Source: Takakia lepidozioides
Lineage: Eukaryota; Plantae; Bryophyta
Assembly (NCBI GenBank): GCA_030704615.1
Contig: CM060731.1
Coordinates: 80,166,001 to 80,230,000, forward strand
Direction: 5' to 3'
DNA: 64,000 nucleotides
This document shows positions 9,511-47,600 of the stretch, piece after piece. The translations under genes and the position numbers were made by a program. Under the pieces are notes generated by a model, which saw only the letters and a list, made by a program, of their open reading frames with translations, made no database searches and was not told the DNA's origin. How positions within the stretch are numbered: the first letter of the stretch is position 1; each line of letters begins with the position of its first letter.

Positions 9511-12500
9511 CTACACAGAGCTGCTGCATATGATCCCCTGTCTACCCCAGGTGTGCTGAAAGTTCATGTGGATGGCCTCCGCGTTCCTGGCATCCCGCTG
9601 TATGACTGCACATATTTTGGCCCATGCCTTCCTAGCTTCAATTTGTAAGTCAAGAAATACAGTAGTCAGGAGGGCAGATATGGAAGTGGTCTCTCCTAGA
9701 AAGGTATTCTTGCATCTTAGTTTCCATAGATGCCACAAGACTGATGCTCTTAAGGTTTAAAAAACAGGGCAGTTAATGGCTCTGTTTTTTGTGGTTGGAT
9801 CATAGTTTAGGAGAATGATTGTGTCTGAAAGACAGGAGGGGTTCCAGGTTTGACAGAAGGTTTTGATATGGGGCCAAATCCTTGCTGGGGCTTGGCAGGA
9901 GAGGAGGCAATGTTCTATCGATTCTGTCACTGCAGTAGAACATCAAGCACATAAAATCGAACCCTGAAACTGTAGCCATTCCCCAACTTTGAGAACCCTA
10001 TGTACTAATTGCCATAGAAAGGATGCAATCTTTGCAGGGCGGGATTTAATCCAAACTGAACCCCAAATAGTCTTCCAGTTTTTATCACAGAAATTGTACA
10101 ATCCCCATCTAGCTTCCCATTTCTTGTCCATAGGTTGAGACACAGATAATGCTTTGTATCCCTTCTTAGTTGTGTATGCAAAGAAAGGCTCTGGAGCATT
10201 GTTGAATTTCCAGGACCATTCTTGGGGGTCAATGTCCATTTCTGCGAGAGGTCTCCCTAGAATCCATACAAAGGTGTTAGAAAGAAGCCAGGATCTGGTT
10301 GTGGTTATAAGGGGTGGTATATGATCCATGGCTTTATCTGGGGCTGTCCAGCAGCATATCCTCACCGGCGTTAGAGTCATGAGATTGAAGTGAATTGGGT
10401 TTGGGTTTGTAAGTGTAAGCCTAAGAGAGAAGGTGTCAATAGAGAAGGTGTATACTGACATATCATTGTGACTGAGTTCATCTAGAAACAAAATGGTAAG
10501 CTTGTTTTGCAGAATGACTAAAGCCCATGAGTTGGGAGCTGGCTGCGGAGGGCCAAGTGCCAGAGTGGCCAGCCATTGTGGTGGGATAGTTTGAATGATA
10601 TCATGGTAACCTTTTGATGCCCGGGACCTCCCCACAAAAAGGGCCAGCGCATCTTGAGAGATGAGACTATCTCCCGACCATATGTTATGAATCTGTCTGA
10701 CCCCGAGGCAATCCCATTTGGACCATCTCATAGCCTGGTTTTTCTGAGAGGTATGTCATTGAGAAACAGATGTTGTCTTTTGATTTCATAGAAGTTGCTT
10801 GGCTGGGCTTTTGTAAGCAGTTTTCTGAGCCTTCCCCAGGCCGACCAGATATTGGACCATAGAGTGGAACTGACTGATTTAAGGTTGAAGCCTTGAGTGA
10901 TCCAGCGCAATGATGGGGTCCAAGGGGTGTTTTGGAGTGGCGAGGAATTGGCAATGTGGTCATGGACCAAAAAATTCCAGCAACCTCCTTCTGGTCCAAG
11001 AAAGCGCGGAATCCATTTTCCAAGGAGGGCCACTATCTGTAGTTCAGGGTCCAACACCCTAGCCCTCCTTTCTTTTTGGTAAACATATCTGTAACCAAGC
11101 TACTTGTGGTCTCTTGTTGTGAATGGATCTTTCTGCTCCCCAAATGAAGTTCCGGAGGAGACGTCTGATTACTTGCATCTGTTTAGAGTTAGGGCGCCAT
11201 GAGGAGGCATAGTACCATAAACCAGCTGAATGAATCTGATTCACCACTCAGGCTCTACCAACGAGAGAGAGATGCTTTGACCCCCAGTAGGTCAATTTTT
11301 TCTTTAGTTTGGATAATGTAGAGGTAAAGATTTGCTGGTCTGTGAGGTTAATACCAAAGGTATATCCTAACAAGGTGGTTGTTTCGCCAGGCTGGAGCCA
11401 ACAGTGACACTGATCCACCTCCCAAGAGGGTGGTGAACCCATAATGGAAGCCGTTAGGTCACCAACGAGCATGCCTGAAGTTTTGTTCCAATTGATTTTG
11501 AATCCCGAGGCTTTGCAAAAGGTATGCAGAGTCTCTCCCGCTTGGTCCAAGTTTTCTGACTTTGCTTGCAGCATTAAAAACGTGTCATCCACGAACATAG
11601 AGTCAGTCAGGTAGGTGTATTGGCCCGTTATATAGTTTGAGACCCTAAGGCCTGTCATTAATTGGTTTTGCTGCAACATATACCCCAGGGTATCTGCCAC
11701 TACCAGAAACAGAAAGGGTGAGAGGGGACATCCCTGTCTAACTGATCGCCGAAGAGGGAAGGAAGAAGACAAGTGGCCATTTACAGTAACCCTACTGGAT
11801 GAAGAAGTAAGGAGAATCTTGATCCATTTACAAAAAGAATGAGGGAACCCAAATTTTAGCAAGGCTGCAAGCAAATAGGACCATTCCACCCGGTCGAAAG
11901 CCTTTTCAAAATCCAAGAGAAGAAGGGCAATGGCTTGATTGGTCCTTAGGGCATAGTCTGGAATTTCCTGTGCAAGGAGGAGGTTATCCAGAATATACCG
12001 GCCTTTAATAAATCATGTCTGGTTGGGCCGAATAATGAATGGAAGAAGAGGTTGCAGTCTAAGGGCGAGAGCCTTGGCAATGATTTTGTAGGCAACATTC
12101 AGAAGGGTTATAGGGCGATAATTCGAAATTTTCGTTCTGTCCCCCTTTTTGTACAACAAGGTAATAACCCCTTGAGCCATTGAAGGTGGCATTTGACCTT
12201 TGCTGAAACAGATGGTTGGCCATGGCTGTAAAGTCCCCTGAAATCTCTAGCCACAATGCTTTATAAAATTCAACAGAAATGCCATCTATACCAGGTGATT
12301 TGTTGTTATGCATCTTAGATAGAGCTTCCTCTAGTTCCAAGTCAGAGAAGTCTCCCTCAAGTTGCGCGGCATATTCCGGAGAAAGCATGGTAGGAGTGTG
12401 AATCAGACAGGCTGTCTGTTCATCAGAAGGTTCTAGGGAGATGCTGTCACTTTGAAAAAGTTGCTGGAAATGGTCCCCAACATGGGTTCCCATCGATTTA

Positions 12501-13753
12501 GGTGCTGTGTTTGAGATTCCGGATGGCTGGGCCACAAGTTCAGGGATGGTCTGTGAAGCTCTTCTCAATCTGGTCTTGTCAAAGAAGTATTTTGTCATCT
12601 TTTCCCCTTTTGTTGACCAGTTAACCCCCGCCTGTAACTTCCACTTTCTTTCCTGGAATTTATGGTGAATGTCTAGATTGTTCCTGGCTTGGATATAAGT
12701 TTTGTAAGTATCTTCATCGCAATGCCTGGATTCCAATGCAGATTGGCATACTTTGAGGCATTTAGATAATGCCTTAACCCTTCTCTTTCGGATGAGTGCC
12801 AATTCCCGGCTCATTTTTTGGCTTTCTGTATTGACCGCTTTTAGCTTGGCCAGGAAAAGCTCAGTTGGATTTAGGTATGGGTTGCCAGCCTGAGACCAAG
12901 CCTGCAAAAGACCCTGTTTGAAGGAGGGTAATTTGAGGAGGAGATTGTTTAGCTTGTAGAGGCCTCTACCTCGTTGGCATGAATGAGGGATTGAGATAGA
13001 AAGGGTGATTGGTGCGTGGTCAAATCCCAAGGGAATGGATTCCTGCGGGGCTCTTTTAGAGAATTGAACAAAATTGAGGGAGAGGTAAGCTCTGTCAAGA
13101 CGAGCCATGCTAAGGTCGGTGAGGGTTCTATTGTTGGACCATGTAAATGTGATATTGGAAGCTTGACCAAAAATAGGTGTTGCCTCCTTGAGACTATGTG
13201 TTTGAGCACAGTTGAACCATTGGTCCATCTCTTCTGAATTTGGGGTGAAGGTTCCAGCCCCTCGCCTATCCTCCTGGACCTCAACCATATTAAGATCACC
13301 TGCTACAATCCAGCTGTCTATGTTTAGTTGATCTTTCATTCTTGCATTGACAAGTCTCCAGAATTCTGACCTTTCTGCAGATGAGTTTGGAGCGTAAATG
13401 TTCACTAACCCAATCGAGCCAGCTGCATTGGGTAGGGTTATTGCGCAGAACTGCAGTCTGCCAGGTATCCATATATCTTCTGCTGCGAGAAAGGGTTGTA
13501 AAGAAGGAGATAATAATATCGCCGTCCCTCCTTTGGTGCCTGAAGAGGTTGGTTTCCAAAGAGAGTTTGTTATAGGCCATAGATAGTCTGAAAGGTTGTC
13601 AATTTTGGTCTGGTCTAGCTTGTGTTCCTGCAGAAATATTATAGAGTCACCAGAGAGGAAGGGAGCCATCCAAGTTTTGATTCTCAGCTTTTTGAGAGAG
13701 GAAGGATCTGATCCAAGGCCCCTAATGTTCCAGGAGTGAAGGTTAAAGGTCAT
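9511..13753 (-). pseudogene. LINE ORF2: APE endonuclease, reverse transcriptase, zf-RVT
   Basis: Motifs SWNIRGLG, FLQEHK, NIYAPN, AGDLN, RLDR, DH (APE); KSPGIDG, DFEKAFDRV, RQGCPLSP, FVDD (RT); FLWQLVH and C..C....ESIEHCLLSC. Stops at about 12013-12015, 11248, 11059, 9943 and 9757. Frameshifts at about 12170 and 10730. Confidence 0.92.
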
Positions 13754-13897
13754 TGGGAGGGAATGGAGGGCCTGGACTGGAAACCAGGTTTGATAGCCCT
13801 TTGGTATGATAAACGAATTTTACCCTACGATCTTTTGGTCGCACTGAGTTGACCCAGATGAAGTTGTTCGGGGGTTTTCGGGTTTTGTTGAGGATGG

Positions 13898-16336
13898 TTA
13901 TGAATACACCCCAGCTCTGCATGGATATTGGTTATCTGGTATTGGTTGAAACTGCTCTTTTGAAACAATGGATATAGTAACAGCCTGGGTAGATACCCCA
14001 TCCGGGAAAAAAACAGCTGAAAACAGGTGCTGGAGCTCTGGATATCTTTGGAGAAGAGAACCATCCGAAGGCAGATTTCCAGAGGGAATGTTGTCAGGCA
14101 AATTGCATGCTGGTAGGATGTGTCTCCTATCTTTATTCTGGCTGAGATGTTTACTTTTACTACATAACATCCAGCATCTGTTAGTATTTCCTGATTGAAG
14201 CTGGTAAATGAAACAGGGTGAGGGTGAGATGGGCACCTGAATAGGGGAGGGTAGAGGGGTAGGTGTCAAAACCCTAGGTGGAGAGGTGACTTGCGAGCTG
14301 GCCTGGGCGATGAGTTGAGTGGAGACCGTTATTGTTGGAGGCGATATTTGCAGATTTTCGACTGCAGGGTTGAAGTTGCTGCTTTCCTCCTGAGTTGAGG
14401 TGTTTGTTGATTCCTGAGAGTCCAAGGATACGTTTGGGGATCCGAATAGCTTGTTCTTGTTGATGTGCTCCCTGGTTTTTTGAATTTCCATTCTGTAATT
14501 GTCATGGTCAACCTCGGAATCCAAGTGAGCTTGAAGCAGCTGGAACCTACTGACTAATGTGTCCTGATTACGGATTTGCAATCTGTGGCTCCTCCCGGAG
14601 CAGATAGCCATTCCTGGTAAGTCCAAATTGCCTCTGTGGCGGTGGTGCAGAGTAGATTTCTGCATCCTCTACAAGGGCAAGAATATGGGTTGAGGGTTTG
14701 ACACTTAGCCCTGGGTGTTCCTCCAGATATGCTCCCCACGAGATTTTTGTAAATGGTGAAAGCGAATAGTGGGGCTGCAACTTGTGGAAGAACTCCTGAA
14801 TTTTGTATTTGAACAAAATCTCAGGTTGCTGTTGGGAGGGTTTGATTGCAGGAAGTGTTTGATGTCTGCAATAGTAATCCAAAGTGATTCCACACATTCG
14901 AAATCATCTAATGTGATTAGAATAGCTGGGGGAATACTTTTCCGGAATATGAGGGGAGTGACACAGGAATCAATCATCTCCAATGCTGAGCAACCCTTTA
15001 GATCCAGGTAAGGGAATGAGCAGGTTTGGAGGTTGGCATTGGCAAAGGTGGAGTTGCATGCGATGCCGGTGGTAATTTTAGGAAAAGAGTTGCTGGTTGG
15101 AAGTTTCAGTCTGACTGATCTCAGCTGTTGTCCATCTTGTACTTTTGTCTTTTTTTTTTTCAGTAGCCACCAGTTGTTGATGTTCAAACTGCTTTGCCTT
15201 CCCTTTGGAAATAGAACCCCCCGTATGATGATGAGCTAGTAATTCTGCATGCATTGGATCCTTGCTGCTATCTCCTTTGGCAATATTATGTTGTGGACAA
15301 GATCTGAGTTGCAGAGGATCGTTGGGAGCCCTTTGAAGGGCCTGGGCAGCATGAGCGTTTGGTGGAAGCATGGAGCCCACGGTGTGGTTGTTCATTTTTT
15401 GCCTTTGATTCGCCTCCGCTGTTGAGGGTACCCCTTATTGCTGCTGCTGAAGGTTGAAGGGGACAACGGGCTGATGTCGTTTGCGTTTGGCTGTGGGGCA
15501 GTCGATTTTAAAGTGACCAATCTGACCACAGTTGAAGCAAACTGCATAGGTAGTGTCTTCTATGAGCTGAATCGTGAAATAGTTGTCTTCTTCATCTATT
15601 GGCAGTTTCACGAATTGCGGCAGAACATCCTCATCTGGCATCATCAACATGAATTTGGCACATCCAGTCTCATGAAGGCGTGATGCAATAGTCACTGATC
15701 TCCAAGCTGGGTCCTGCCTTAAGTTCTGTGTACACATTTGGGGATCAAATACCGCCAAACATCCAAGGTATGATCCAAAATGATTCGCAATGTCCGCCAA
15801 GTTAACCAGATATTGATCTGGGATGTAAGGAACAGAGACAATGCGTGGGCCCCAAAGTTTACCATTCCTGTTTCCCATCTTGGATGACCAATGGAATATG
15901 TTGACATTGTATCCCTTTGTGTGGGGGTTGAAAAGCAAGGCCTGGTTTGCTGCTTCTTGGGTTTCAAACATGATTGAAAAGAAACCTCGACCCTTCTCAT
16001 GGCAAAACTGTTGACGCAGTTCTCCAGGGCCGCCAAGATGTTTAATGGCCCAATCTCTAACAATAGCTCTATCCACTTTTGTCCCTGGAAAGTGAATGAG
16101 GATACCAGACTCCTCCATGGTTGTAACCTTTTTTTGTAAATCTGGGATGTTCATATTGATCATTGGATAGTCCCTGTCCAAGTCGGCTTGATTGAGAATG
16201 TTTTCTTCCACCCATTGTGTAGGTGGAGTTTCCAAAATGGGTGGGTTTGAGCAGTTTGGAATTGTTGGAGGTGAATCCAGCCTGGGAAATTTAAGGAAGG
16301 ATTGGGGGGGAGAGAGAGGACTGAAGTGGAAAGGAA

Positions 16337-16387
<51 letters not shown>

Positions 16388-16558
16388 CTTTACAGACCCG
16401 TTGGTCGTAGCAGTCCTGGAACGCTCTTGATGTGCGAGGAAGAAGCCTGTCCCAGATGAGATGTTGGGTCTTCTCTGTCTATTCTGGAAACCCCGACGAG
16501 CCTCCATTGATTGTCTGCTGCGAAACTGGTTGTTCCCAAGAGCCATTGCACTAATCAA
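13898..16558 (-). pseudogene. LINE ORF1 (RRM/DUF4283-like region, CX2CX4HX4C knuckle, long C-terminal extension), disrupted
   Basis: 15435..16235 encodes GRGFFSIMFE...ALLFNP and CFNCGQIGHFKIDC. The upstream part is joined across a poly-C tract. Downstream ORF pieces run 15395 to 13898. Confidence 0.75.
16337..16385. repeat. G49 homopolymer inside LINE ORF1
   Basis: 49 consecutive G, read as poly-Pro on the minus strand. Confidence 0.95.
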
Positions 16559-28670: not shown

Positions 28671-29051
28671 AGCAAGAAAGGGGAGGTTGCTTGGATCCAC
28701 GCATTGATGGGGGAGAGGGGGTAGGGTTAGGAGGAAGCTGTGGTGGTTGGGAAGGGAGGCGGGGGACTGAGAAGGCGGGCATTGTACTGGGAGATGGGAG
28801 AAGCCAGGGAGGACGACAATGCAGTGCTGGAGGATGTCATTGAGGAAAGATAGGGAGGAGCTGGAGCTAGCGAAGAAGGTGCATCCACGGCGATGATATC
28901 GATGACGAAGACGTAGGAGCTCGCAGAGGAGAGTGAAGGAAACGTGGATAGGAGGAAGTAGGCAGGTAAAGGGAGGGGTGACAGGGGGTAGTGACTGCGG
29001 TGCATGGCACAGTTTGATGTAGGCCCAGCGGCCTTCTTGCAACAGTCACTG

Positions 29052-32000
29052 ATGCGCGCATGGAGGAGCTTGGTGTTGCTGGTCCTGCTATGCTCCTCTC
29101 TGCCAGTATTACAAGCCGCAGGCACGAATGCTCCCTTGTCTTTTTTTTTCCCGCATCTTCTGCATCGTATTCTGTTTTCTGTTGAACCTGCATTCTTTAA
29201 TAGTCTCGTAATAAGCAATGTGTCCGGGATGTGTGGATGATGCGGGTTTATTTTCGATAGTCAAGATTCGCTGTAGGATGTAGCTCCAAACGAGCAGTGT
29301 GACTTAATACTGGAGGCCATTCAACCATAAAAAGGAAGAGTCTCTAAACCCGGTTCGATGTAGATGATAGAAGGTACCGTAATCTTGGCAATATGAAAGC
29401 ACAAATGTTGCTCCATTGCTATCGTGCAGACCTCCATCAATCATTTTTTTCCCAGAAATCTATGCAGTTGACCTTGTGGCCCGACATACTACCTGCGCCT
29501 GCGTGTCACCAAAGAGCGAGTTTGCTTTCTGGGGCCTTGTAGGCAGTCAGTCGTTCGTGAGTCGTTCGACATTTTTTAACTGTGATGTTAGCTGGTTGAT
29601 AATCACTATCGGCAGAGCACTTGGTCAAACTACCTACCTGAATACCACATATCTTCCAATTTGCAAGTCAACCTTTCCACCTTCTCTATATTTGGAGACT
29701 ATCCTTTTTGAGAAATCTCCTGCAGAGTTTGTGAAGTGACGATTGACCTACTATCCATGCTGGTTGATCTGGTGGGCCACTTGACTATCTGCCGATGAAC
29801 TCGACCTTCAAGTTTCTGGGAGGGCTGTGACATCAACAGGGATTGGCAGCAATAACTGTACTCCTAATTTGCTGTAATGTGCAGGCCTCCTTATAGTTAG
29901 ATGATCTCAGATAAGAACTGCCAAAAATCTTCCCTGCAATCAACAGCCTCTTTGGAAGGTTGTAGTGTGTACCAGCAGGTCCCAAACAAAGTGTTAGTCA
30001 ACAGCAGTAATCAAGCTCTGTTGTATCACTTGTGTAATTATCTCTGTTACAAAGTTCTAGCTTTTAGGGTCAGGGGTTCTATGATCATGCTGCAGCGATG
30101 GCCTAAGTCGCACGCACCCAAGTTGGTATACTGCTTCTTCTAATACTTCAACTGATACCGACAAGAATATGAGTATGAGAGATGACAGAGTCAGAGAGAC
30201 CATGTTCCCCTGTGCTTCACTAATAAGCAGGACTTTTTCCTCGAGATCGTTGTCATCACTATACTTTAAGTCCTTCTTAATGAAATATTTACATGATTTG
30301 CTCACATGGAGTGTTTTATAAAAGGTATGTTTTGCCCAACTTACAGGCCTTGCTCAATTGAGCGATCTTTGTATGCCAAGCAGCAAGATGCAGGAAAAAG
30401 GATGGGATTTGCCCAGCTTGTGGACATGCAACTTTGTTTTCTTGCTCTGTCCTGTGTTATGAGATTTCAGGAGATACTAGTGTCTTTTGAGAGGCTGGGC
30501 ATTCTGGCGGAGGTATTGACTAATAAAGATCAGGCCATTCTTGGCCATTCCTAATAAAAATTAAAAAGAAGAACTTCAGGAATGAACTTCACAAGGTGCT
30601 GTGTATTTAAGCTGAGATTTAGGCCTGGTTTTTAGTGTTCTTGTCTGTTTGTTATATGCTCTTGTCCGATTAGGTCTTTGGACCGTTCCTGTGGGTGTAA
30701 TAAGTTGGTTTGCTTCATGGTTTGTTCAGCGCATTTTGTGCCTTGACACTTCTTGTGTCTCGCATTTCTAAGGTTTTCTCTATTGGGATCTGCAGGGTCC
30801 GACAGTGAGGCTTTGGAACCACAAGTTAGTAATCTGTGGCGAGGTGGCCAGCTCCCCCCAGGTGTCGGGCACCATCCTCCCTGGGTGGGGCACCATCCCC
30901 CTGGTGTGGGCCACCACCCTCCTGGTGTTGGCCATCATCCTCCTGGGGTTGGCCATCATCCTCCTGGAGTTGGACATCATGGTCCAGAATCAAGCCTATA
31001 CCGGGCATTTATCGCTCTTCAAGCATGGAAGCATGCTATTACTGATGATCCTCAAAGAGTCACAGCTACATGGGTCGGGACGGGCGTGTGTGAATACAGA
31101 GGGGTGTTTTGTTCACCACCCATAAACGACAATACTTCAAGTATACTAGTGGTTGCAGGGATTGACTTGAACCATGCAGACCTGGCCGGGACTTTGGTAG
31201 AAGAGTTGGGGTTACTATATGAAGTTGGTCTCTTTCATATCAACACCAATCGGTTCACAGGGACGATTCCAGCCTCCTTCAAGGATTTGGGGACCTTGTT
31301 TGAGCTTGATTTGAGTAACAACGGCTTTTCAGGTCCATTCCCAGTAGTTGTCTTGGATATCCCAGAACTCATCTTCTTGGACATTCGATTCAACCACTTC
31401 TGGGGTCCTCTTCCACCAGCGCTCTTTGACAAGCACCTGGATGCTTTGTTCGTAAACAACAATGGATTTGACTATATTCTACCGCAGAATCTTGGAAATT
31501 CACCAGTTTCAGTGGTTGTGTTGGCAAACAATTACTTCACCGGAGACATCCCAACCAGCATAGGAAACATGTCAGGTACTTTGAACGAGGTTATCTTTCT
31601 TCACAACTCAATCTCAGGTGAACTTCCAGAGCAGATTGGTCAGCTGAATCTTGTGACAGTGTTTGATGTCAGCTTCAACAAGCTGAGTGGCACGCTGCCT
31701 AGCAGTATCTCAAACATGACCAGCCTGGTTGATTTCAATGTGGGAAACAACAGCATCACTGGAAACGTGACTGCCAATCTGTGCAATTTACCCAATCTGA
31801 AAAACCTCACAGTCTCCAACAACTTGTTCACTGGTGTAAGCACATCTTGTGCAAGCCTTCCTGCTCGTGGTGTTATAGTTGATGAGGGAGGAAATTGTAT
31901 TCCAGATGCATCAGGCCAAAAGTCAGACAAGGAGTGCGCTGCTCTTTTATCCCCTCCACCACATCCACAGTCGCCTCCCCCTCTTTCCTCTCCACCACCT

Positions 32001-33092
32001 GCACACTCTCCTCCCCCCCTTCCCCTCTGCCACCTGCACTCTCTCCTCCCCCGCCACCTCCCCACTCTCCTCCCCCTCCTTTCCCCCCACCACCTGCGCA
32101 CTCTCCTCCCCCCCCTTCCCCCCACCACCTGCTCAGTCTCCCCCCCCTCCTTCACCAACTCCACCTGCTCCCTCTCCCCCCCCCTCCTTCCCCCACCAGC
32201 TGCTCAGTCTCCCCCCCCTCCTTCCCCAACCCCACCTGCTCCCTCTCCCCCACCTCCTTCCCCCCACCAGCTGCTCAGTCTCCCCCCCTCCTTCCCCCCA
32301 CCACCTGCCCGCTCTCCTCCCCCCCCACTGCCTTCTCCTCCTCCGCCTCCTTCTCCTCCCCCACCTTCTCCTCCCCCGCCTAAGCACTCTCCACCACCCC
32401 CTCCCTCCCCACTCCCCCCACCTCGATCTCCTCCTCCTCCAACTCCTGTGCCTTCGTACCCACCACCACCTTCTTCGTGCCCATCAGGATACACTCCTGG
32501 TAAGGCCTCAGGCACATGTTTTATGCTAGTATCGGAGAACAGAACATGGGATGATGCGGAATTCTACTGCCAGCAGCATGGTGGGCACTTGACAGCTGTT
32601 GCAAGCCGTAATGAGCTTCGTGATATAGGTCATTTGTGTGAACGGGTCCACGAACATTCAAGCCCATATAGCCCTAAAGGGCAGGGCTGCTACCTAGGAG
32701 GGAGAAAACCATATATGATTTCTCCGCCTAATTCGTCATGGACGTGGTCATGGTCCCCATGCATTGAGTTCAAGCAGTCTTATTGGAATGAGTTTGAACC
32801 CAATAATATCAATAAGAAGGAGGGTTGCACCACTGTGAAATGGGAGCCTCCTATCTTGCAGGTAGGAGAAGACTCTCTAGACTATATGCTCAATGATTAT
32901 GTTTGTTACGCCGAGCTTCCCTTTATCTGCTCTCCATCGAGATGCTCCGGAGTTGGTTGTGGCGTGTCGGATGGTTGCAGAGCGCATGGGGATTCAAATG
33001 CCAGCTGTCAGCCAGACTCATCAGCTGCAGTGGGCTACACCTGTGACTGCAGTCAAGGCTTTGAAGCGGACGACTCTGGAACTTGTTATTGA
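29052..33092 (+). CDS. Secreted leucine-rich-repeat extensin (LRX)-like protein with C-terminal C-type lectin and EGF-like domains; exons 29052-29121 (alternative ATG 29004) and 30796-33092
   Basis: Signal peptide MRAWRSLVLLVLLCSSLPVLQAA. LRX N-cap LYRAFIALQAWKHAITDDP...VAGIDLNHADLAGTL, then LRRs, the Cys linker GNCIPDASGQKSDKEC, Ser-Pro3-5 repeats, a CTLD (32478-32930) and an EGF-like module (about 32943-33089). The intron is phase-consistent. Confidence 0.88.
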
Positions 33093-33615
33093 GTACACCA
33101 GCTGCTAGCTGACTCACATTTGACCATGGTTTTGGCATGGGCTTCTTAAAAAGATACTCCCATCACTTCCATGTTGAGATTTTAGAGGGAAGGGTTTAGG
33201 AAGAATGGGAGGGGAAAGGTAGATTGGTTGTTGGACTGCACTAGGCAGGGAATACTGTAGGGGAGCCATTGATCACCAGGTTCCTCGGGAATAGACAGAT
33301 TGTGGAGCGAAGGCCTAGGGTGTAATGAAGGATATAGTGGACTATGTCCGGGGAGATTCAACCTTGCACTTTCTGTCTCTTCCCGAAGGCAGGTAACACC
33401 AAAGCTGTCAAAGACTGCTTGTTCGTTCAACCTCACCGCAGAGGGAATGATTCCGTGCTACACTGCACTAGGGAGCAAAACAATGTGTCTCTGCCTTCAC
33501 AGAAGAAGGGATTTGAGACACAGGGCGAGGTAGGACTGCATTTATATTCTATCATTGCATCACAGCTAGCTATATTTACTAGGTTGGGATGTCAGGTGGG
33601 GGTGATAGAGCTCAT

Positions 33616-34588
33616 TCACACACCATCTTGGGTGTGTGACCAGTCTTGTAGGCTACTTGTTGTCCAAGTACGGAACTCTCAGTTCCTATTCTTTGACAGA
33701 GATATGCTATTCATTTAGGTTGAATTTCTCTTCTATAAAGGGTGCGGTTCAATCTCTCCGGACCTGTGCAGCTGTTCTGGTTTGTCTACCATAGGTGCAC
33801 ATACTAGTGTATGATATTTTCGTAGCTTTTCTTTCTCTTTTCTGTTCTCCATCTTTCAAGTTTGAAGATTGTGTGACCTCTGACGGGGCTCTCTAAAGCC
33901 GCCGCATATTTGACCTACCCTTGTGTGACTTGTATCAGTTTAGTCGTTGCCTGGCATGTGCGGTGGTTGCTTCATAGACCCCAGGTGTATGTCAGAGAGA
34001 CCATTTGCTGCACACAAGGGAGAGAGTCATCTGTAGGAGGCTGGGTCTCCTCTGAAGAGGTAGTAGTATTTCACCATAATTCTGTAGTACACAGGCTAGG
34101 AGGCAAGGTACTGATGTTGTCTCGACTTCTGCATGGTGCAAGAAGGGAAAATACTATCCTCTGGTAGCATGTGGAGCCATCTGCCTATGTCAATCTGGAG
34201 ATTGTGCAAGGTGACTATGAAAGTCCCAAGTCCTAGTGAGTGATGTGGAGAAGCTTGGGATATATGAGGATGCAGTTATTCCTCAGTTCAGTGAAATAGC
34301 TCCTACTAGAGCTGGAATTTTGGGGTCATCTGACATCTTGGGACCACATTGGTTGTATCACATGGATCCTCTGTGGACTGTCTTATGTTCCTCAGGGAAA
34401 TAACACTGAAGGCAATGGGACTCTGTCAAATCTGCCCATCAGATTTCGAAGGGTGTGATAATTTTTGAAAGTGGATATATGCTTCAGACTGTGATTCCAA
34501 CGCCCTGGCCACCCTATTCTAGTGCTGTGGAGTGACAGCTGCACTGACAACCCACTTCTGCATGGATATGTCTGTAATGTAAGGGTGC
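33616..34588 (+). repeat. Direct repeat copy A (about 1 kb)
   Basis: Colinear with 38534-40240, e.g. TTGTTGTCCAAGTACGGAACTCTCAGTTCCTATTCTTTGACA and CAGACTGTGATTCCAA.GCCCTGGCCACCCTATT. Confidence 0.88.
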
Positions 34589-34959
34589 TGCAACAAGTTC
34601 TCTCTCTCTGAACATCTCTCCCTGTGACTCTGTAGATGCTGTAAAGTTTCCTTTCTGCTTTCTTGCTCTCTTTTACGAAAGCTCTCCAATCCACTCATCC
34701 AAAACATGAAATCGGTTGAAAGATGCAACATCCTTATGGACTACATTCAGCATTGTTTCAGAACTGCTGCAGCAGCTCTTGGTCTGTGTGTGCTTGATCC
34801 ATTGATGCCTTGGCCTCCTTGTTCTCTCTTAAATTGCATTCACAGATAGGGATACATCAATGTCCCCCTAAATAAGACGGGGAAGAGAGTCTGAGAGAGG
34901 GAGAAGATAGTGCACAAAAAGACATCGAAGAAAGGGCAGGTCGATACAGAGGAAACATC

Positions 34960-36450
34960 TGCCAGTGATGGGGAGAGGAAACAAAAGTCAAAACTCGGTG
35001 ATTTCATCTTTGCTCTACCAAAATCTTGGAATACTGATAGCCACCAGGTGAACTGGCTTACAACTATGTACCTGTAAAGATTGATGTTCAGCAGGTTTAA
35101 GTGTGTTGAGAGTAATAAAAGATAGGTAAGAATCCTACCTTCATGATTCCAGAGGCAAGACGGCCATCGACAATATCTAACACACCACTGTGTAAAAAAC
35201 TCAGGGTGGCCTGAATACTCAAGGCATGATCTCCCACCGCAAACATTTTGATGCCCATTTGCTTCGTTGATGCCAATAGCTCCCCTTCTGATGGCATCTC
35301 TGATACCTGTACAACAATAAAATGGTCCTATTGTCCACCAGTGGAAGGACATGGCCTAGTGCATATTAGATTATCCTTATTCAAAGACTGGACCGGCTTT
35401 AAATGGTCTAGAAAAATGGGGGAACCATGGTGGGGGATAAATGGGAAACAGAACTACAGCCAAAACTATTGGTGAAGGACTCTAGTAATGGGGCACACCT
35501 ACATAAAGTTACTTCTGGTTACCCAAATTAACAGAAAAAAAAAGTTGTACTCAAGCAAAAACCTGCTCTCAATTCAGACCACTTAAGTCAATCTCTTGGC
35601 TGTGCCTGAGATCAAAGGAGAAAATTTGCTATGACACAAGCAAAAGAGGGAAATTCTGCTTTCACACACTAGCATCCCATTTCAGTGATTAGTATTGAGG
35701 AGAGGGAGAGCAAGGATCCCATATCATGGTCAGCTTCAGTTCCAATACTCTTCAGGTATCTTTAGCAAGCCTCCTTTAAATTACTATTCAAGATGATGCT
35801 TACAGAAATCACTAAGCAGGCACAAGAAGTGAACTTCCTTGTATAGGGTATCTCTTTGAGAAGAGGAAAGACAACGTCACTAGTATCAAGCACTGAAAAC
35901 TCCTGACCTCCAAAAACTTCACAGAGATGGGTAATGGTCTTGCTTCAGATTTTCGCAACTGAATGTTTAGGACACAACCAATTCACCTGGAAACTGCTGT
36001 AAGATCCATACCCGCCAGACACTATATTTAGTAGAGTGAGGACCCCATAATATTGTCAGCAGGCTCCAGTTTCAAAGACTCTTATTCCCTTCAATTTACA
36101 ATGTGCAATTATGCCTGCAGAATCAGGGTTTGTAGCAGAGGGCAAAGTGTGCCGGGAACTCTCCCTCCACCACGGGAAACTTGTCCCAAACTTAGCCAGG
36201 ATCACTCAGGAAAATGCGCTTGCGGATGACATATGACTAGAGATACGGTGTTGTCTGTTCTCTTCATCAAGACGTGCCTTATACAATCAAGTGTAATTTC
36301 ATGAACATGCGACCGTAGCCTCCGGAATTATCAGTGTAACTCTGCTGCATGTCCTGGACTGTAAAACGCCGGAGTCCCACGGCTGATTCTTCCACTAATT
36401 TTGGAGATTCCTGAAAAATTGCATCCGGATTCTTATCTGTCATCTCCATA
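34960..36450 (-). pseudogene. Degenerate multi-exon gene remnant of unknown identity
   Basis: Exon-like block about 35139-35307 with AG/GT borders (…MPSEGELLASTKQMGIKMFAVGDHALSIQATLSFLHSGVLDIVDGRLASGIMK). Protein-like but stop-riddled frames at 35560-36450. Confidence 0.3.
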
Positions 36451-37158
36451 GCTTGCGACCCGGAGGCAACAGTGAATTCTTATTCTTCCACGACCAGTAC
36501 AGCTTGATCGCACCTCATACGATCGCAGCCAACAGTGTTCCCTGTCCCGCAAAGAATCACATCTCACCAACCGAATCCCTGCAGTTTCAAAAATTCAAAA
36601 TGCTGGAAAAGTCGACAAGATCCGGGGAGAAATTAGAGCAAGCCCTCGGCGTAGCACCCATACCTCCCCTGTCCCAAGAAAGTTGGGATTGAGCAGCAAA
36701 CCTTGGAAGATAACAGTCCCACAGGAAACATAGACAGACTGTGACAATTGGAGCACGATTTCTACCAAAAAAGCCAGGCATCCATCTCACTTGCATCAAA
36801 TGCTAAGTGAGGGTCCAGGCAGAACAATGCACATGAGATTAAAAGCTAAGTTGCGAAGACTCCCACTCATGCATGCCGGTCTTTCTCAGAAAGGTTGAGT
36901 TGACTTACTTTCCTTAGTTTGTCTGTGGCTAGTGGGTTTCTTGGACTGCTGGCCCTTGCTTAAGGTTTTGCTTAGGCTTGGTTTAAGTATTTTGGAGGAG
37001 AATTTTGGCTACTACCTGGTAGTTTGGTAAGATGGATGGTACACTTTGTGGCACCCCAGTGGTTTGAAGCTCAAATCCTTGTCCGGTATGCTGGGAATGG
37101 TATCTCATGTAGGCTTCATGGAAGGGCATTAAATGTGAGCTGTACCCAAGGTTTCCCT

Positions 37159-37430
37159 ACAGAAAAGGAACAAGCAAATAAAGAGAAAACAGCTTTGATC
37201 TGAGCTCGACCCACATGCGTTTGAACTGTGCTCCTTCGGCTTCTTTGGAAGAGAGAGAGAGAGAGAGAAGGAGAACAGGTGTCCCTTACAGAAAAAGAAC
37301 AATAGTCCAGCAAATAAGAGGGAACTTTTAAGAGCTTTGATCTGAGCTCAACCCACATGCGTTTGAACGTATGAACTGTGCTCCTTCGACTTCTTTGGCA
37401 GAGAGAAGAGAGAGAGGGGAGGAGAAGTTT
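37159..37430 (+). repeat. Tandem duplication of about 130-140 bp directly upstream of RPB8
   Basis: AGCTTTGATCTGAGCTC.ACCCACATGCGTTTGAAC...TGTGCTCCTTCG.CTTCTTTGG followed by a GA tract, present twice. Confidence 0.85.
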
Positions 37431-37441
37431 GGCAGAGAGCG

Positions 37442-37885
37442 ATGGCGGACGCAGTGCTGTTCGAGGACATCTTCACAATCACAGGGATGGATCCGGATGG
37501 TAGAAAGTTCGACAAGGTATCGAGGATGGTTGCTCACAGTGAACAATTCGACATGGACATGCTGCTGGACGTGAACACTGACATCTACCCCCTCTGCAAA
37601 CATGAGAAATTCACGATGGCATTGGCATCCACCCTCAGCCTGGATGGAACCCCTGATGATGCCGTGTTCGACCAGAGCAGGGGAAAATCGCTGGCCGACA
37701 AGTACGAGTACGTGATGTATGGAAAGCTCTACAAGTATGCGGACACGGAGGCGAGCGGGACCGTGAAGGTGGAAGTGTATGTGTCTTTTGGTGGGCTTCT
37801 GATGTTACTCAAAGGGGATCCTAACAATTTAAGTAGCTTGCAGCTTGATCAGCGCGTTTATCTGCTGATGAGAAAGGTGGGTTAG
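37442..37885 (+). CDS. RPB8: DNA-directed RNA polymerase common subunit 8 (RPABC3/NRPB8), single coding exon
   Basis: LFEDIF...DPDGRKFDKVSR, LLDVNTDIYP, SLADKYEYVMYGKLYK, YVSFGGLLM..KGD...RVYLLMRK; intact 147 aa. Confidence 0.97.
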   Translation: MADAVLFEDIFTITGMDPDGRKFDKVSRMVAHSEQFDMDMLLDVNTDIYPLCKHEKFTMALASTLSLDGTPDDAVFDQSRGKSLADKYEYVMYGKLYKYADTEASGTVKVEVYVSFGGLLMLLKGDPNNLSSLQLDQRVYLLMRKVG

Positions 37886-38533: not shown

Positions 38534-40240
38534 CACATACTGTCTTGGGTGCGTGATCCAGCTTAGGCTGCTTGTTGTCCAAGTACGGAACTCTCAGTTC
38601 CTATTCTTTGACAAGGATTTGCTATTCATTTAAGTTGAATTTCTTTTGTATAAAGGTGTGCTTCAATCTCACCTGACCTGCCTAGAATGCATGCAGCTGT
38701 TCATGGTTTGTCTTCCATTGTATATATGAAAGTGTATGATATTTTCTTAGGTTGTTTTCTTTCTCTCTCCTTTTCTCCCTCTTTTGAGATTGAAGACTGT
38801 GTGACCTCTGACGGCTCTCCACTGCATATTTGACCTACCCTTGAGTGACCATGAGTGTAGGGCTGCCTGGCTTGTGCGGTGGTTGCTTCATAGACCCCAG
38901 GTGTATGTCAGAGGGACCTTCTGCTGCACACAAGGGGAGAGTCATCTATAGGAGGCCGAAACTCTGCTTGAAAACTGTGCAGTTCGTGCAGGTAGACTGC
39001 CCACAACTAAATGTCTCAGTCTCCTGTGAAGTGGTGGTAGTATATCTAATAATCCTGAACTACACAGGGTAGAGGGACCTTTTCTTTTGCTGCACCCAAG
39101 GGGAGAGAGTGATCTATAGTAGGTGGAAATTCTATTTGAAAAACAGTTTGTGCAGGTAGACTGCTCAGCATTTGGCTGTCCATAACTAAGTATGTCTGTG
39201 TCTCCTGTGAAGAGGTAGTATTATATCTCTATAATCCTGTAGTACACAGGGTAGAGGGACCTTGTCTTTTGCTGCACCCAAGTGGAGAGAGTGATCTATA
39301 GGAGGTGGAAATTCTGCTTGAAAAACAGTTTAGACTGCCCAGCATTTAGGCTGTCCATAACTAAATGTCTCTATCTCCTCTGAAGAGGTAGCAGTATCTC
39401 TCTATAATCCTGTACTACACAGGGTAGAGGGACCTTTTCTTTTGCTGCACCCAATGGGAGAGAGTCATCTATAGGAGGTGGAAATTCTACTTGAAAAACA
39501 GTTTGTGCAGGTAGACTGCCCAGCATTTAGGCTGTTCATGTAACTAAATGTCTCAGTCGCCTCTGAAGAGGTAGTAGTATCCCTCTATAATCCTGTACTA
39601 CCCAGGGTAGAGGGACCTTTTCTTTTGCTGCACCCAAGGGGAGAGAGTCATCTATAGGAGGTGGAAAATTCTGCTTGAAAAACAGTTTGTGCAGGTAGGC
39701 TGCCCAGCATTTAGGCTGTTCCTAACTAAATGTCTCAGTTGCCTCTGAAGAGGTAGTAGTATCTCTCTATAATCCTGTACTTAACAGGCTAGGAGGAAGT
39801 ACCTATGTTTAGTCTCTGCTTCTGTATGGTGCAATATGGGAGCATGTAAAGACATCTGCCTATCTCAATCTGGAGACCAAGGAGCACATTGGTTGTATCA
39901 CATGGATCTTCTGAGGACCGTCTGATGTTCCTAAGGGAAACAACATTGAAGTGTTTTGATAACAAGTCGGAGTCTGTTGGATAGATTCTGGGAGGTAGGA
40001 AGTGGTGCCTCATAGTGATCTGAGCCTATCCAGGAAGATGATGATGGTGGGGAAGGCAATGGGACTTTGTCAAATCCTGCCCGTCGAATTTCAAAGGGTG
40101 TGATAATTTTTGGAAGAGGATATGTGCAATGGCTCCAGACTGTGATTCCAAAGCCCTGGCCACCCTATTTCAGTGCTGTGGAGTGACGGCTACCCGGAAT
40201 AACCCACTTCTGCATGGATATGTGTGTATTGTAAGGGTGG
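38534..40240 (+). repeat. Direct repeat copy B, with internal tandem expansion
   Basis: Paralogous to 33616-34588. Confidence 0.88.
38909..39790 (+). repeat. Tandem array of 5 units of about 160-182 bp
   Basis: AGAGGGACCTT...GCTGCAC anchors at about 38911, 39071, 39253, 39426 and 39608. Confidence 0.92.
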
Positions 40241-42386: not shown

Positions 42387-44684
42387 TCAAATGTTATTCT
42401 CGCCGTAGTCCAAACCAGGCGTCCACGAAGATGACTTGAGTAGGCGATCTAAGTAGGTCAAGGTCGCAATGCCACAGGGCTCTAACAACTCACTGTTCTG
42501 TGTGGGGACTGCCACCTGTTCTTTGCCCAACATATGCTGATCAGGCCAGTTAAGATGACCTGTTGCTACCATGGTTGCAGTTGGTACGTCTGGATAGACA
42601 TCTCTTGGTGCAAGGGAATTCACGAAGAGACAGTGAACCTCCTCCTGCAATCGGGTACTGATTGTGCGCGGAGCGTAGGTCGTTGGCTGTCTAGATTCAG
42701 TACTAGGCGATGTGCATGCATGAACATTTCCTAGTATCAAATTATTCTTTGTCAAAGAGCTGCTGCACTGTTGGATCAACGATGACACTTCACTGTCACA
42801 AGATCCATCCTCAGTGGTAGAGGCACTGCCACTCTGGTCCGCCATTTTGGCTAGTTGAGCACCAACTTGCTGTCCACCTTCCTTCCGTAGCCTGGCGTTC
42901 AACAGTGCTGAGATTTGTTGATTAGCGTGCACCCATTGCAACGACGTCTGAATATTAGTACCGAACTGTCTGTTAGATTCAAATGAGAGTTGGTGAATCT
43001 CCTCGAGAGAATCTCGCTTGGTCAACTTCAAAGGTCTTTCAGATTCAGATACCATTGTTTGTAGATCGAGGCTGTCCATACTCGGAAAAAGTTGGTGGGT
43101 TGGTCTGCGCCGGAGTTGAATTGACTCTAAAGTCTGCTTCGTCGGGAACAGGTGATCTTCATTTGCACGATTCTCTAGGGTGGCAGCTGATATGGACTTC
43201 TTGTAGATGCGGCATAGAGCTACCTCATTCTGCAAACCGCGACCTTTGAATCGTTAGGCTGCTGATTCACCGCAAACTTCGTCGGCAACAGATGAGAATA
43301 GCATGTGTACAAAGTTCTTGCAAACTAGAAGAAGCTCAGACCAGTGTCAGCTCAATGAACTCTCATGGTATTAATAGGTCGTTCATCCATGCAAAAGTAT
43401 ATAACTTCTAGATAATACCTACTTATCAGCGATCGATCCTCTCAATGGTGTTAAGTTGGAAAAACGTTCACCGGGGCCTGGGCAGCACAGTTTTTACATT
43501 GAAGCTTGATCTTTCCATGCCACCGTAGATACTTACTAGTACATTGGCGCTAGTGACAAGTGATTAATCTTGATAAAAATTCACTATATGGAAGAAGAAG
43601 AAACATCCTATTTATGCGCACTGCCAGGCCTTCAAAATTCCGAGTCCGCCCAAATTCAGGACTAGCGTTCGATAACTGTTCTAAACCTGAAGAATGGAGA
43701 ACATACCTGCACTCTCTCTGACTTCCGGTAGTCTTTTGGGACTTGAGGAGGGGCCTCCGGTTGGTCAAGCTGTGGTAACCGGTACTCGTTCATGATCCAT
43801 TCTGTTTTTGAGCCCTTTGGAGCCCGGCCAGTGTAGAACACAAGAGTTTTCTTTAGACCAATGCAGCAGGATTCTTGGGCACTGCGCACAGGCCGATCCG
43901 TTCCTGTTGCCTTCCAGTAGCCTGAGGCTGTGACGCGATTTGGACGAGCTCCATTGGGATATTTCTTGTCCCTTGGGCAGAAGAACAGCCATTCTCTCTC
44001 TCCTTGCATGAATGCCAGGCCTGGATAGCAGACATGGTCAGGATGCACTGTTAGATCTGTCAGTTAGATCCTAGTTACAGTCGAATTTTCAATGAAAATC
44101 ATAATGTTTACCAGATGTCATGAGGATGTCATATTTCCTTAGCTACCTAGAACACACACTGAAATGAAAACCTTGGTTGCAGAAAACCTGCGGCTCGGCC
44201 TTAAAGGTTGCTGTATGGCGATACAGGCATTGACTGAGGGGAAATCGGGATTGTGGAGACAAACGCTGGGCGCAAGGTCTGCCCTTCATCACACGATTCA
44301 AAAACAAATTGAAGCTAATTAAGGGAAGACACTGGCACACCCGCTTACTTCAGCTATACAGAAGCTTTCCTCAGGTGGTCTGAAAGCCCATTATCTTTAG
44401 TACTTACCTAAGTACCTTGGCTTGTTAAACGCACAAAAACGCATTCACACTCTCAAACCCCGCCATGTCCTGTAGGTCAGAAAAGGCCTCACACCTGGGA
44501 GCTCCCAAGGGTCGTAACGGTAGAGGTCCACCAGATTGATCAGCTCCACAGCCATGTGCTTGCCCTCTACCATACGTCGCAGATAGTAGCCCACCAGCTC
44601 TTCTTCTGTGGGGTGGAATCGGAACCCTGGCATGTTAGCCATCTCATGGGCCTGATCAGCCTCCCTAAGAGTTATATGCTCCAT
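42387..44684 (-). CDS. NAC domain transcription factor (LOV1/ANAC035/FEZ-like); exons 44684-44495, 44020-43707, 43229-42387; about 448 aa
   Basis: [97 protein letters not shown] introns are in phase. Confidence 0.95.
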
Positions 44685-47600
44685 TGTCACTTCGGCAGGA
44701 CGAGGACACGTCCCTTCGCCCAAACCTCGCCGATGTAACCTTCACGACTGCGAACTCGAGCTCCTTTTCGCAAAGACAAGCAGTCATCCGTTGTACTTGA
44801 ACCGCAAACTGCAGTGAAACTACATACCGTACAGCAATGAAGTTGTGGTTCTTGGCAGCCACTCAATGAGGTCTGACAGCAGCACTCCCTCTGCATAGAG
44901 GGAAAGAGAGAGAGAACAACGGTTATAAAGCTCTTCTCAAGAAGTGCCCAAGTGACTCCTCTGCCCCGCTAAATTTGTAGCTAGTAGAGAAGAAACAGCC
45001 GCCGCTACTGCGGGGGCTCGACCGATCCGTAGAGTTTGCACTCGAGGTAGACGCAGACTAGCTGACTGCAGGCACTGGATATGATAGGGCAGGCATGACA
45101 GCAATATAGCGGCTCCAGCCATGTCTATAATGACGCTGCCGTCCTTTGTCAGATTCCGCCCCCCCGATGACGTGCTGCTCTTCGTCATACATATCTCCTT
45201 CCGGGCAGCACGTGATGCCCGCCCCTTCTTCTTCTCTCTCCCTCTCCCTCTCCCTCTCCCTCCACTGCTATCCTCACTGATCAATTCTAGAACCCCTGCA
45301 TTTCAAACATCATCCTTGCAAACGCAGCATAGATGCCAATCACCCACTAGTCAACTCTGCTTTCAACCGTGCAGCAAACAACCCTTCTGCCACCCTCTGC
45401 TACCTACCTGGAGGTTGTGCAAATGTACACTCGGGGAGTACCCAGCCTTCCTGTGATACATATTATTAGGTTACCCATTTCAGACTCCAGGAGCTCACAC
45501 AAAACTCTGTTGGCCTACAATGCCCACCCTTTCAACGCCAACATTACTATTACAGTGGGCAGCTCAGCTGCCTGCCTTTGTACCGTTGTACCCCAATCTC
45601 CTTTTTGTTTTTTGGATTCGAAGTTAGTGCACTGAGTGCCAGCCATGATGATTGTGGGTTCAAAGTCCTGCTACCTTGTTGTGTTTGCTAGAAGACAACT
45701 TGTGGTGTCCTTGAAAGGAAAGGGGTTATTTTCTCCTCTCACTGTAATTAAGGGGTACCTAAAAGTGTACATGTATACGGCAGTAGGTAGAGTAGGTAGT
45801 AACTAAGTGCGACTCTGGTGGAGCACTACTGTAGTTACTACCTGAGAAAGCAGGTGCACAGAGAAGATTGAGTGACGTCGGAAAATTAGGTCACCGATGG
45901 CTGCGGGGCCGTGGTTACTTGGCCTCCCCCACAGATTTGTGAACTTCCATGCACCGCTTCTCAACTAAGTATCCCCATCTCAAGTGCTGATGGTTTTGGT
46001 GTTTTGGACTTGTAGCCACTTCTCATATGGAATCCAAGTTGGATTGCGGGTCGACAAGATTGGGATCAAAACTGGATTGTAATTGAAATGTGCAGTGCCA
46101 CAACAGGGCCCTCAGTAATCCAACTAGAACTGCGGAGTCTTCCGGAGTGAGCAACCTACCAGTAGCCTGCTCAAATTGCACTGGGATTCACTTGAGTTCT
46201 GGATGTCATCATTCGGACTTATTTCTGCGATTGATTTTATGACCCAGAAAATACTACTGCTCTGTTCTGGCTGTTGCCACTTTGAACTATATCCAAGGAT
46301 CCACGCTCAGAAACTCACACTACTGAAATCTGCACTCAAATTGCACCAGAAATTCAAGCGATTAATGTGTGACATCATCATTCAGACTTATAATTTTTCC
46401 GCTATTGAGTATTTGATGGGTCCGGCTGTCGTCGAAAACTCTGGGCCTCGAACTGCACTGGAAATTCACTCGAGTTTTGGGTGTCATAATTCAGAGTCCA
46501 GACTTGTCTCTTTGCCCAGATAAGAACAGTACCAAGTCCTGGAGGCTGGCGGCTACCTAGTACCTACGTAAGTTACAGAGAACACAATTCTTCTACAGCA
46601 AAAAGAGAGCTTTAATTCTGGCAATATAGGTACTCATGTCGTATGTTTCAATTGCAGAGGAGTCTGGCCACTAAAAAGGCAGGCATTGATATTTGTAAAA
46701 GGCAAAGGAGGCAGGAGTAATGGAGTGAGTTAGGAGTTAGGACCAGTTGTAGGAGTAATAACATAATGCTGGCCACCCAAAAGGTGGTGGCAGTACTTTG
46801 CAGTGTGGAGTAATGAACTTAATCATTTTCGTTCAGACAAAGCAGCTCTGCTGCGAACGCCAAATCTCTGCACTGTGCTCTGCCTCCTTCTGTGCCCAAA
46901 AGAGAAAACCCTAACCCGCCTCGTCTACTCGACAGGGTAAGATTGAGGGGCGGACCCACCTCCCATAATGAAGGAGGGCATGCTGCAAGCGTGCCCTTCC
47001 TGTGAGGTAAAACATATTGGAGGGGCTAAGTACTCTGGGTGGGGCTGTGGGCACCCTTCAATTAGACAATTCTCAATGATCTAAATTTTTTACTAATTGA
47101 AATGGCCTACACGCCTTTGCTAAGTTGATCAATTGTGTCCCACTATGGTCCTTCACAAGCTAGTTGTGTGGCTCATTGTCATAAATGAAATGAAGTCCAA
47201 CTTCAAGGTCGAAGTGAATGGAACCAGTAGTTGATGGAATGGGGGTTAATTGACTTGATGAACCATCGTTACCAGACCTACTTTATGACTTATTGTCCAA
47301 GTGTTTTGAAAGTAATGCAGCAAATTATGAGTGAGCTGGTAGATGTTCATCAATCAACAGTAACTCTGTGAATTATGGGCCCTTACAATCATGCACGCTT
47401 AGTGTTTGCAACTTGGCTACCTACATGACAGAAAACCATTTGTAGATTGTGTGAAGGAGGGTGTAATAAGCATCAATGGTACATTCTTCCTAAGTTTTGC
47501 TGGTTATAATTATTGCAATTGTCTTACCTCCACTCTCTTTGAGAAGATGGGTCACTGATTGAGCGATGTATATACTACATACAATTTTTTTCTGGATGAG

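What the first reader, a model, noticed from the sequence alone, without database searches (positions are those of the whole stretch)
29052..33092. LRR-extensin fused to a C-type lectin and EGF domain: a candidate new cell-wall sensor architecture
Seen in sequence: one open frame runs signal peptide, His-rich repeat, LRX LRR domain, Ser-Pro extensin linker, CTLD, EGF-like module, stop, with no transmembrane or kinase domain. Established knowledge: canonical LRX proteins bind RALF peptides through the LRR and end in an extensin tail. In land plants the CTLD is known mainly from the C-type lectin receptor kinase, whose ectodomain this one resembles (GGHL...EL....LC...C.LGGR...W.WS). Inference: a secreted bifunctional protein coupling peptide (RALF-like) binding to Ca2+-dependent glycan binding in the wall or at a microbial interface. 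I know of no description of this combination.
Basis: partly seen in the sequence, partly recalled or inferred. Interest (0 to 1): 0.9.

Follow-up and report, generated by a model that had tools for sequence, protein, structure and literature searches.

The report
Moss LRR-extensin with lectin tail
This is a real, expressed moss cell-wall protein that joins a peptide-binding domain to a sugar-binding lectin domain; the same design was already reported in the model moss Physcomitrium in 2016, though I found no test of what the lectin part does.

Summary
The gene is real and transcribed, but the architecture is not new. The signal peptide is a separate exon (29052-29121) joined over a 1,674-nt GC-AG intron, seen spliced in an RNA contig. 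Exon 2 (30796-33092) carries the His repeat, LRX LRR, Ser-Pro linker, C-type lectin domain (CTLD) and a weak EGF-like module. No TM/kinase exon follows. No read spans the linker, which has about six single-C assembly losses, but both read-corrected halves stay in extensin register. At least 13 full-length moss homologs (Physcomitrium, Ceratodon, metagenomes) have the same fusion in one frame. MacAlister et al. 2016 (PMC4738400) already state that four of five Physcomitrella LRXs end in a C-type lectin domain. Marchantia and about 107 other LRX hits, mostly vascular plants, lack it. What this work adds: a conserved EGF-like tail; an intact animal-type Ca2+/sugar site (EPN-E-ND) that the one plant C-lectin receptor kinase examined lacks; a QPD variant in one moss paralog; and the design in a probably early-diverging moss. 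Best model: a RALF-binding LRR tethered to wall glycans by a Ca2+-dependent lectin instead of Tyr cross-links (untested). The scan noted a second such gene elsewhere in this genome (s1-459404).

The parts
28700..29051 (+). 5' UTR part of exon 1 (the transcript extends at least this far upstream)
   Evidence: RNA contig X2 record 9 covers 28700-29117
29052..29121 (+). Exon 1 coding part: signal peptide (23 codons plus one base)
   Evidence: Translation; splice frame check
29122..30795 (+). Phase-1 GC-AG intron, 1,674 nt; a phase-1 intron follows the signal peptide in Ceratodon and Marchantia LRX too
   Evidence: Joint skipping 1,674 nt in X2
30846..30980 (+). Gly-His-His-Pro-Pro-Gly-Val heptad repeat, 5-6 copies (1-2 in other mosses, several in Marchantia)
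   Evidence: Tandem repeat of period 21
30981..31943 (+). LRX-type LRR domain with N- and C-caps. LRX2 F90, H131, F202 and E248 are kept; E295 is Val, Q296 is Asp; the dimer Cys138 is Thr; there is no Cys-rich tail
   Evidence: E 1e-103 to LRX2 (6qxp); residue map
31944..32471 (+). Ser-Pro4 extensin-like linker built from a 36-bp (12-aa) repeat, with one Tyr; about six single-C losses in the assembly
32475..32933 (+). Long-form C-type lectin domain
   Evidence: Pfam Lectin_C; model pLDDT 72; Z 14.9 to codakine and about 14 to DC-SIGN/Mincle/langerin CRDs
32796..32897 (+). Ca2+ site 2 / sugar site: EPN (32796-32804), Glu (32820-32822), Asn-Asp (32892-32897)
   Evidence: Alignments
32943..33092 (+). 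EGF-like module with 7 invariant Cys, then the stop codon
   Evidence: Weak Pfam EGF/cEGF hits in several homologs; invariant Cys
33093..33601 (+). Unspliced 3' UTR
   Evidence: RNA contig X2 record 11

Best explanation
It is the moss form of an LRX cell-wall protein. SHOWN: it is transcribed and spliced, has a signal peptide and no membrane anchor, and combines an LRX LRR, a Tyr-poor Ser-Pro4 linker, a CTLD with all five canonical Ca2+-site-2 ligands, and an EGF-like end; the whole layout is conserved across mosses. INFERRED: the LRR binds a RALF peptide as in LRX2/LRX8. The Hyp-arabinosylated linker is a stiff spacer. Because moss LRX linkers lack the Tyr motifs used for covalent cross-linking, the CTLD-EGF tail takes over wall attachment. 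It would bind mannose/glucose/GlcNAc/fucose-type (EPN-specificity) sugars of wall polysaccharides or glycoproteins in a Ca2+- and pH-dependent, reversible way. That would position the RALF-LRR complex in the wall of growing cells, probably tip-growing ones.
For: Splice and expression. RALF-pocket F90/H131/F202/E248 are kept here and are at least 96% conserved (F or Y at F90) across LRX hits. Linkers of the CTLD-bearing LRXs have 0-2 Tyr, and PMC4738400 notes that the Physcomitrella linkers lack cross-linking Tyr and end in a CTLD. EPN..E..ND is conserved in 15 of 16 rows of A2. The fold matches Ca2+-dependent CRDs. The Marchantia LRX instead ends in an extensin tail with no CTLD in the 8 kb downstream. 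P. patens has functional RALFs (PMC9933782). EPN meaning mannose-type specificity is established knowledge of animal CTLDs.
Against: I found no binding or genetic data for any moss LRX-CTLD. Conserved motifs do not name the ligand. This copy has Val at LRX2 E295 (Glu in 12 of 13 moss and 100 of 107 other LRXs) and lacks the dimer Cys and the Cys-rich tail. The model is weak in the long-loop region (pLDDT about 50 at residues 81-100).
Confidence: 0.5

Rival explanations
1. The CTLD binds glycans on other secreted glycoproteins, including the arabinosylated linkers or N-glycans of other LRX molecules, or binds a protein. It builds a non-covalent LRX network or dimer in place of the missing disulfide dimer, Cys tail and Tyr cross-links.
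For: The dimer Cys138 and the ladder Cys are absent from all 13 CTLD-bearing LRXs. Dimerisation is needed for LRX8 function. Many CTLD and EGF modules mediate protein contacts (established knowledge).
Against: LRX8 C157A still dimerises, and many vascular LRXs also lack that Cys, so its loss needs no replacement. Marchantia lacks both the Cys and the CTLD.
Confidence: 0.22
2. It is a soluble pattern-recognition lectin: the CTLD binds microbial mannans or glucans and couples them to RALF-dependent immune signalling at the wall.
For: The closest structural matches are animal mannose-type CRDs (Mincle, DC-SIGN, dectin-2). Moss RALFs modulate immunity (PMC9933782). One paralog cluster changes EPN to QPD.
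Against: The site is highly conserved and the family is small (four CTLD-bearing copies in P. patens), which is unlike fast-evolving immune lectins. Structural rank reflects what the PDB holds. Known LRX roles are in growth and wall integrity.
Confidence: 0.15
3. This particular paralog has drifted away from RALF binding and works mainly as a structural lectin-glycoprotein with an unusually long linker.
For: E295 is Val, confirmed by DNA and RNA contigs without differences. The linker is about 175 aa against 37-83 aa in other mosses. A second LRX-CTLD gene is reported in this genome (s1-459404, unchecked).
Against: E295/Q296 contact the RALF N-terminal helix, which is dispensable for high-affinity binding. 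The essential loop-binding pair F90/H131 is intact. The LRR end branch is not long (0.28-0.29).
Confidence: 0.1
4. The fusion is an assembly artefact: the true frame stops in the linker and the CTLD belongs to another gene or a pseudogene.
For: No contig spans the linker, and the assembly has several homopolymer errors there.
Against: The read-corrected 5' half (LRR frame) and 3' half (CTLD frame) both read as the same Ser-Pro4 repeat. The CTLD transcript contig starts inside the linker with no 5' exon of its own, at similar depth. At least 13 homologs with short linkers are single frames.
Confidence: 0.03

Closest known systems
Physcomitrium patens LRX-like proteins with C-terminal C-type lectin (MacAlister et al. 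2016, PMC4738400; e.g. XP_024383064.1, XP_024373216.1, XP_024391105.1) and Ceratodon KC19_4G213000 / KC19_1G052900
   Same: Same order: signal peptide, GHHPPGV repeat, LRX LRR, Tyr-poor SP4 linker, CTLD, EGF-like end. About 50% identity in CTLD-EGF and 49-59% in the LRR; same EPN..E..ND site; phase-1 intron after the signal peptide in Ceratodon.
   Different: Longer linker (about 175 aa against 37-83), more His repeats, E295 is Val, GC donor. It branches outside the Bryopsida LRX clade. The paper's main text does not mention the EGF module or the Ca2+ site.
Arabidopsis LRX2 / LRX8 (PEX1), RALF4-binding wall proteins (PMC7132299; PDB 6qxp, 6qwn)
   Same: LRR domain E about 1e-103; RALF loop-binding residues conserved; extensin-type linker.
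   Different: No intermolecular disulfide Cys, no Cys-rich tail ladder, no Tyr cross-link motifs; ends in CTLD-EGF rather than extensin.
Plant C-type lectin receptor-like kinase (At1g52310 family; Forsythia KAL2473995.1)
   Same: N-terminal half of the CTLD 38% identical, including the GGHL..EL..LC..C.xGGR pattern with an extra Cys pair; atlas TM 0.50.
   Different: The Forsythia kinase ectodomain (its gene model is broken here) lacks EPN and WND-type ligands and has TM and kinase domains. The LRX CTLD keeps the Ca2+/sugar site and is followed by EGF.
Animal Ca2+-dependent CRDs and CTLD-EGF proteins (DC-SIGN, Mincle, codakine; selectins)
   Same: Fold (Z about 14-15), EPN..E..ND site, CTLD followed by EGF as in selectins.
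   Different: 20-30% identity only, with plant-specific loops and extra Cys. No evidence of direct descent.

Membership tests
Moss LRX with C-terminal C-type lectin (PMC4738400) | LRX-type LRR domain | tested here: met
Moss LRX with C-terminal C-type lectin (PMC4738400) | Ser-Pro3-5 region lacking cross-linking Tyr | tested here: met
   One Tyr in the linker; it is longer than in Physcomitrium
Moss LRX with C-terminal C-type lectin (PMC4738400) | C-terminal CTLD homologous to the Physcomitrium one | tested here: met
   52% identity, E 4e-57 to XP_024383064.1; 16-row alignment
Moss LRX with C-terminal C-type lectin (PMC4738400) | Single transcript from LRR to CTLD | tested here: inconclusive
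   Both halves are transcribed and in register, but no contig spans the linker
Canonical (angiosperm) LRX | Signal peptide, no TM | tested here: met
Canonical (angiosperm) LRX | RALF-pocket residues | tested here: met
   F90, H131, F202 and E248 kept; E295 and Q296 changed
Canonical (angiosperm) LRX | Dimer disulfide Cys and Cys-rich tail | tested here: not met
   Thr at Cys138; ladder Cys absent
Canonical (angiosperm) LRX | Ends in an extensin domain | tested here: not met
   Ends in CTLD-EGF
Canonical (angiosperm) LRX | Binds RALF | not testable with these tools
   Needs a binding assay
Ca2+-dependent C-type carbohydrate-recognition domain | CTLD fold and canonical disulfides | tested here: met
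Ca2+-dependent C-type carbohydrate-recognition domain | Ca2+ site 2 ligands (EPN/QPD, E, ND) | tested here: met
   EPN, E118, N142-D143 of the query fragment, with Leu in place of the Trp of WND
Ca2+-dependent C-type carbohydrate-recognition domain | Measured Ca2+-dependent sugar binding | not testable with these tools
   Needs a glycan array or ITC
C-type lectin receptor-like kinase | TM helix and kinase after the CTLD | tested here: not met
   Stop at 33090-33092 and an unspliced 3' UTR
EGF-like domain | Six-Cys EGF pattern / Pfam gathering score | tested here: inconclusive
   Cys spacing fits and is invariant; best Pfam E 0.0007-0.03, below cut-off here

The most novel reading that the evidence does not exclude
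Mosses, from their earliest-diverging lineage on, swapped the cross-linked extensin anchor of LRX for a working animal-type Ca2+-dependent C-type lectin plus EGF. Paralogs then retuned sugar specificity (EPN to QPD). This would give a land-plant CTLD with real Ca2+-dependent carbohydrate binding, and a direct, testable link between RALF sensing and a specific wall glycan.
Probability: 0.35. Interest if true: 0.55.

Novelty: new member of a known kind. Interest (0 to 1): 0.3.

Why it matters
How LRX-RALF complexes are held in, and read, the wall is an open question. Moss LRXs offer a version in which the wall-binding part is a folded, assayable domain rather than a repetitive glycopeptide, and P. 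patens allows knock-outs and domain swaps. The intact EPN..E..ND site, absent from the one plant C-lectin receptor kinase examined, makes it a good candidate for a true Ca2+-dependent plant C-type lectin. The architecture itself has been in print since 2016, so this is an extension of a known kind and not a discovery.

Tried and rejected
Downstream TM/kinase exon: none in three-frame translation of 33000-37500, and the RNA runs unspliced past the stop. Signal peptide in the same ORF: rejected. CTLD in Marchantia: the v3.1 scaffold ends in the linker; the ruderalis scaffold has a 1-kb gap, then an extensin end and a stop, with no CTLD hit in the 8 kb downstream. Paper searches for PpLRX, MpLRX and LRX+RALF+lectin found no functional study; one DOI was not held, the peptide-signalling review was irrelevant, and the supplement of PMC4738400 is not held. 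The first structure model was poor (pLDDT 54); the second, from a deeper alignment, was used. Organism: RPB8 identities and a quick tree put the host as sister to other mosses with weak support, so this is not decisive. Searches were run on exon 2 or its parts by reference; the joined spliced protein was not sent to any search tool. Only a short local frame check of the joint was made.

Full report
Observation. A stop-free frame runs from 30753 to 33092 on the + strand. Pfam finds LRRNT_2 and LRRs, Lectin_C above its cut-off (E 2.4e-8) and a sub-threshold EGF hit. The signal peptide at 29052 is not in this frame. A contig from an RNA-type run (X2) skips 1,674 nt; this fits a phase-1 GC-AG intron at 29122-30795 and puts the signal peptide in frame with exon 2. 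A phase-1 intron follows the signal peptide in Ceratodon and Marchantia LRX genes too. A second RNA contig covers 32378-33601 without a joint, so the stop is the real end and no TM/kinase exon is spliced on.

The linker. It is a 36-bp repeat array. As assembled, its translation drifts out of Ser-Pro register. Contigs show missing C's at 32012, 32117, 32281 and 32293. With these restored, the 5' half read in the LRR frame and the 3' half read in the CTLD frame give the same Ser-Pro4 repeat; the middle needs two more, six in all, so the frame is kept. Only one stop exists in any frame of the linker, and it lies in another frame. No contig spans the array, so a single transcript is inferred here, not shown.

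Homologs. The CTLD-EGF part finds a 612-aa single-frame protein with the identical layout in several independent metagenome assemblies. It also finds a 623-aa protein that is Physcomitrium patens XP_024383064.1. Among the best 120 LRR hits, a local profile finds CTLD-EGF in Ceratodon proteins, in clusters containing P. patens proteins, and in unnamed metagenome proteins. It finds none in the roughly 107 other hits, mostly named fern, gymnosperm and angiosperm LRXs. Caveats: only the top 120 of 1,014 were seen, some models are partial, and no named lycophyte or hornwort LRX was among them. The Marchantia LRX ends in extensin after an assembly gap and has no CTLD in the 8 kb downstream. Two more metagenome loci carry the tail.

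Phylogeny and host. The LRR falls in a bryophyte clade (100/99) outside the Bryopsida LRXs. The long Marchantia branch is placed between them in the best tree, but monophyly of the CTLD-bearing LRXs is not rejected (p-AU 0.27). The neighbouring RPB8 is closest to mosses and sits as sister to Sphagnum plus Bryopsida with weak support. That is compatible with an early-diverging moss such as Takakia, which other notes of this scan suggest; others say liverwort. I regard the host as probably an early-diverging moss, unproven. If so, the fusion dates to the base of mosses or earlier.

Literature. MacAlister et al. [quoted passage not shown] The main text does not mention EGF. I found no functional study in the searchable library.

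LRR anatomy. The domain matches LRX2 and LRX8 structures (E 1e-103 and 1e-98). Of the RALF contacts named in PMC7132299, F90, H131, F202 and E248 are kept. E295 and Q296, which touch the dispensable RALF N-helix, are Val and Asp; Glu295 is otherwise nearly invariant. The dimer Cys and the Cys-tail ladder are absent, as in all moss CTLD-LRXs.

Lectin anatomy. The model (pLDDT 72) matches Ca2+-dependent CRDs at Z about 14-15. EPN, the following Glu and Asn-Asp are conserved in 15 of 16 aligned rows; one moss cluster has QPD and Ser-Asp. In animal lectins EPN means mannose-type and QPD galactose-type binding (established knowledge), but the accompanying Asn-to-Ser change could also mean loss of binding. 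That ectodomain lacks EPN and the Asn-Asp pair (one example, with a broken gene model). The last 48 residues have seven invariant Cys and weak EGF hits across homologs; one extra invariant Cys in the CTLD could pair with the seventh (inference).

Mechanism. The most likely function (0.5) is a RALF-binding LRR held in the wall by a Ca2+-dependent lectin, which replaces Tyr cross-linking as the anchor, with the glycosylated linker as spacer. Rivals are a glycoprotein or self-association module (0.22), microbial glycan sensing (0.15), a RALF-independent paralog (0.1) and an artefact (0.03). None of the binding steps is shown.

Verdict. A real gene and a new member of an already described moss LRX type. 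The additions are modest: the EGF-like tail, the intact sugar site and its variation, and the phylogenetic bracket. Searches used exon 2 by reference; the joined spliced protein was not searched. Interest 0.3.

Noticed in passing
P0001 cluster (L001:9582-11420, JGI metagenomes): A moss LRX-CTLD paralog has QPD and Ser-Asp in place of EPN and Asn-Asp, the classic mannose-to-galactose type change (or loss of binding).
   Followed up: partly
P0193 (Ceratodon M758_1G050100): The annotated protein runs out of frame in the Ser-Pro linker, so its CTLD-EGF is lost from the model, while P0196, with an identical LRR, keeps it. Linker errors probably hide this architecture in other annotations.
   Followed up: partly
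window 29122-30795: Non-canonical GC-AG intron, supported by an RNA contig; the Ceratodon and Marchantia counterparts use GT.
   Followed up: yes
window 37442-37885 (+): Intronless RNA polymerase subunit RPB8 gene, preceded by a duplicated stretch near 37180-37440; used as a rough host marker.
   Followed up: partly
window 42387-44723 (-): NAC-domain transcription factor gene in several exons.
   Followed up: no
window about 9900-16500 (-): Broken LINE retrotransposon (endonuclease and reverse-transcriptase-like pieces).
   Followed up: no
window 38993-39792: Tandem array of a 182-bp unit, 4.4 copies, 88% matches.
   Followed up: no
L013:6001-10554 (Forsythia ovata): The C-type lectin RLK gene is annotated as two proteins because of a frame break inside the CTLD in that assembly.
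   Followed up: partly
L010 and L008 (P0009): Metagenome CTLD-EGF tails at 57% identity, the closest to the window's; L010 has a poly-His stretch at the end of its linker. Host unknown.
   Followed up: no
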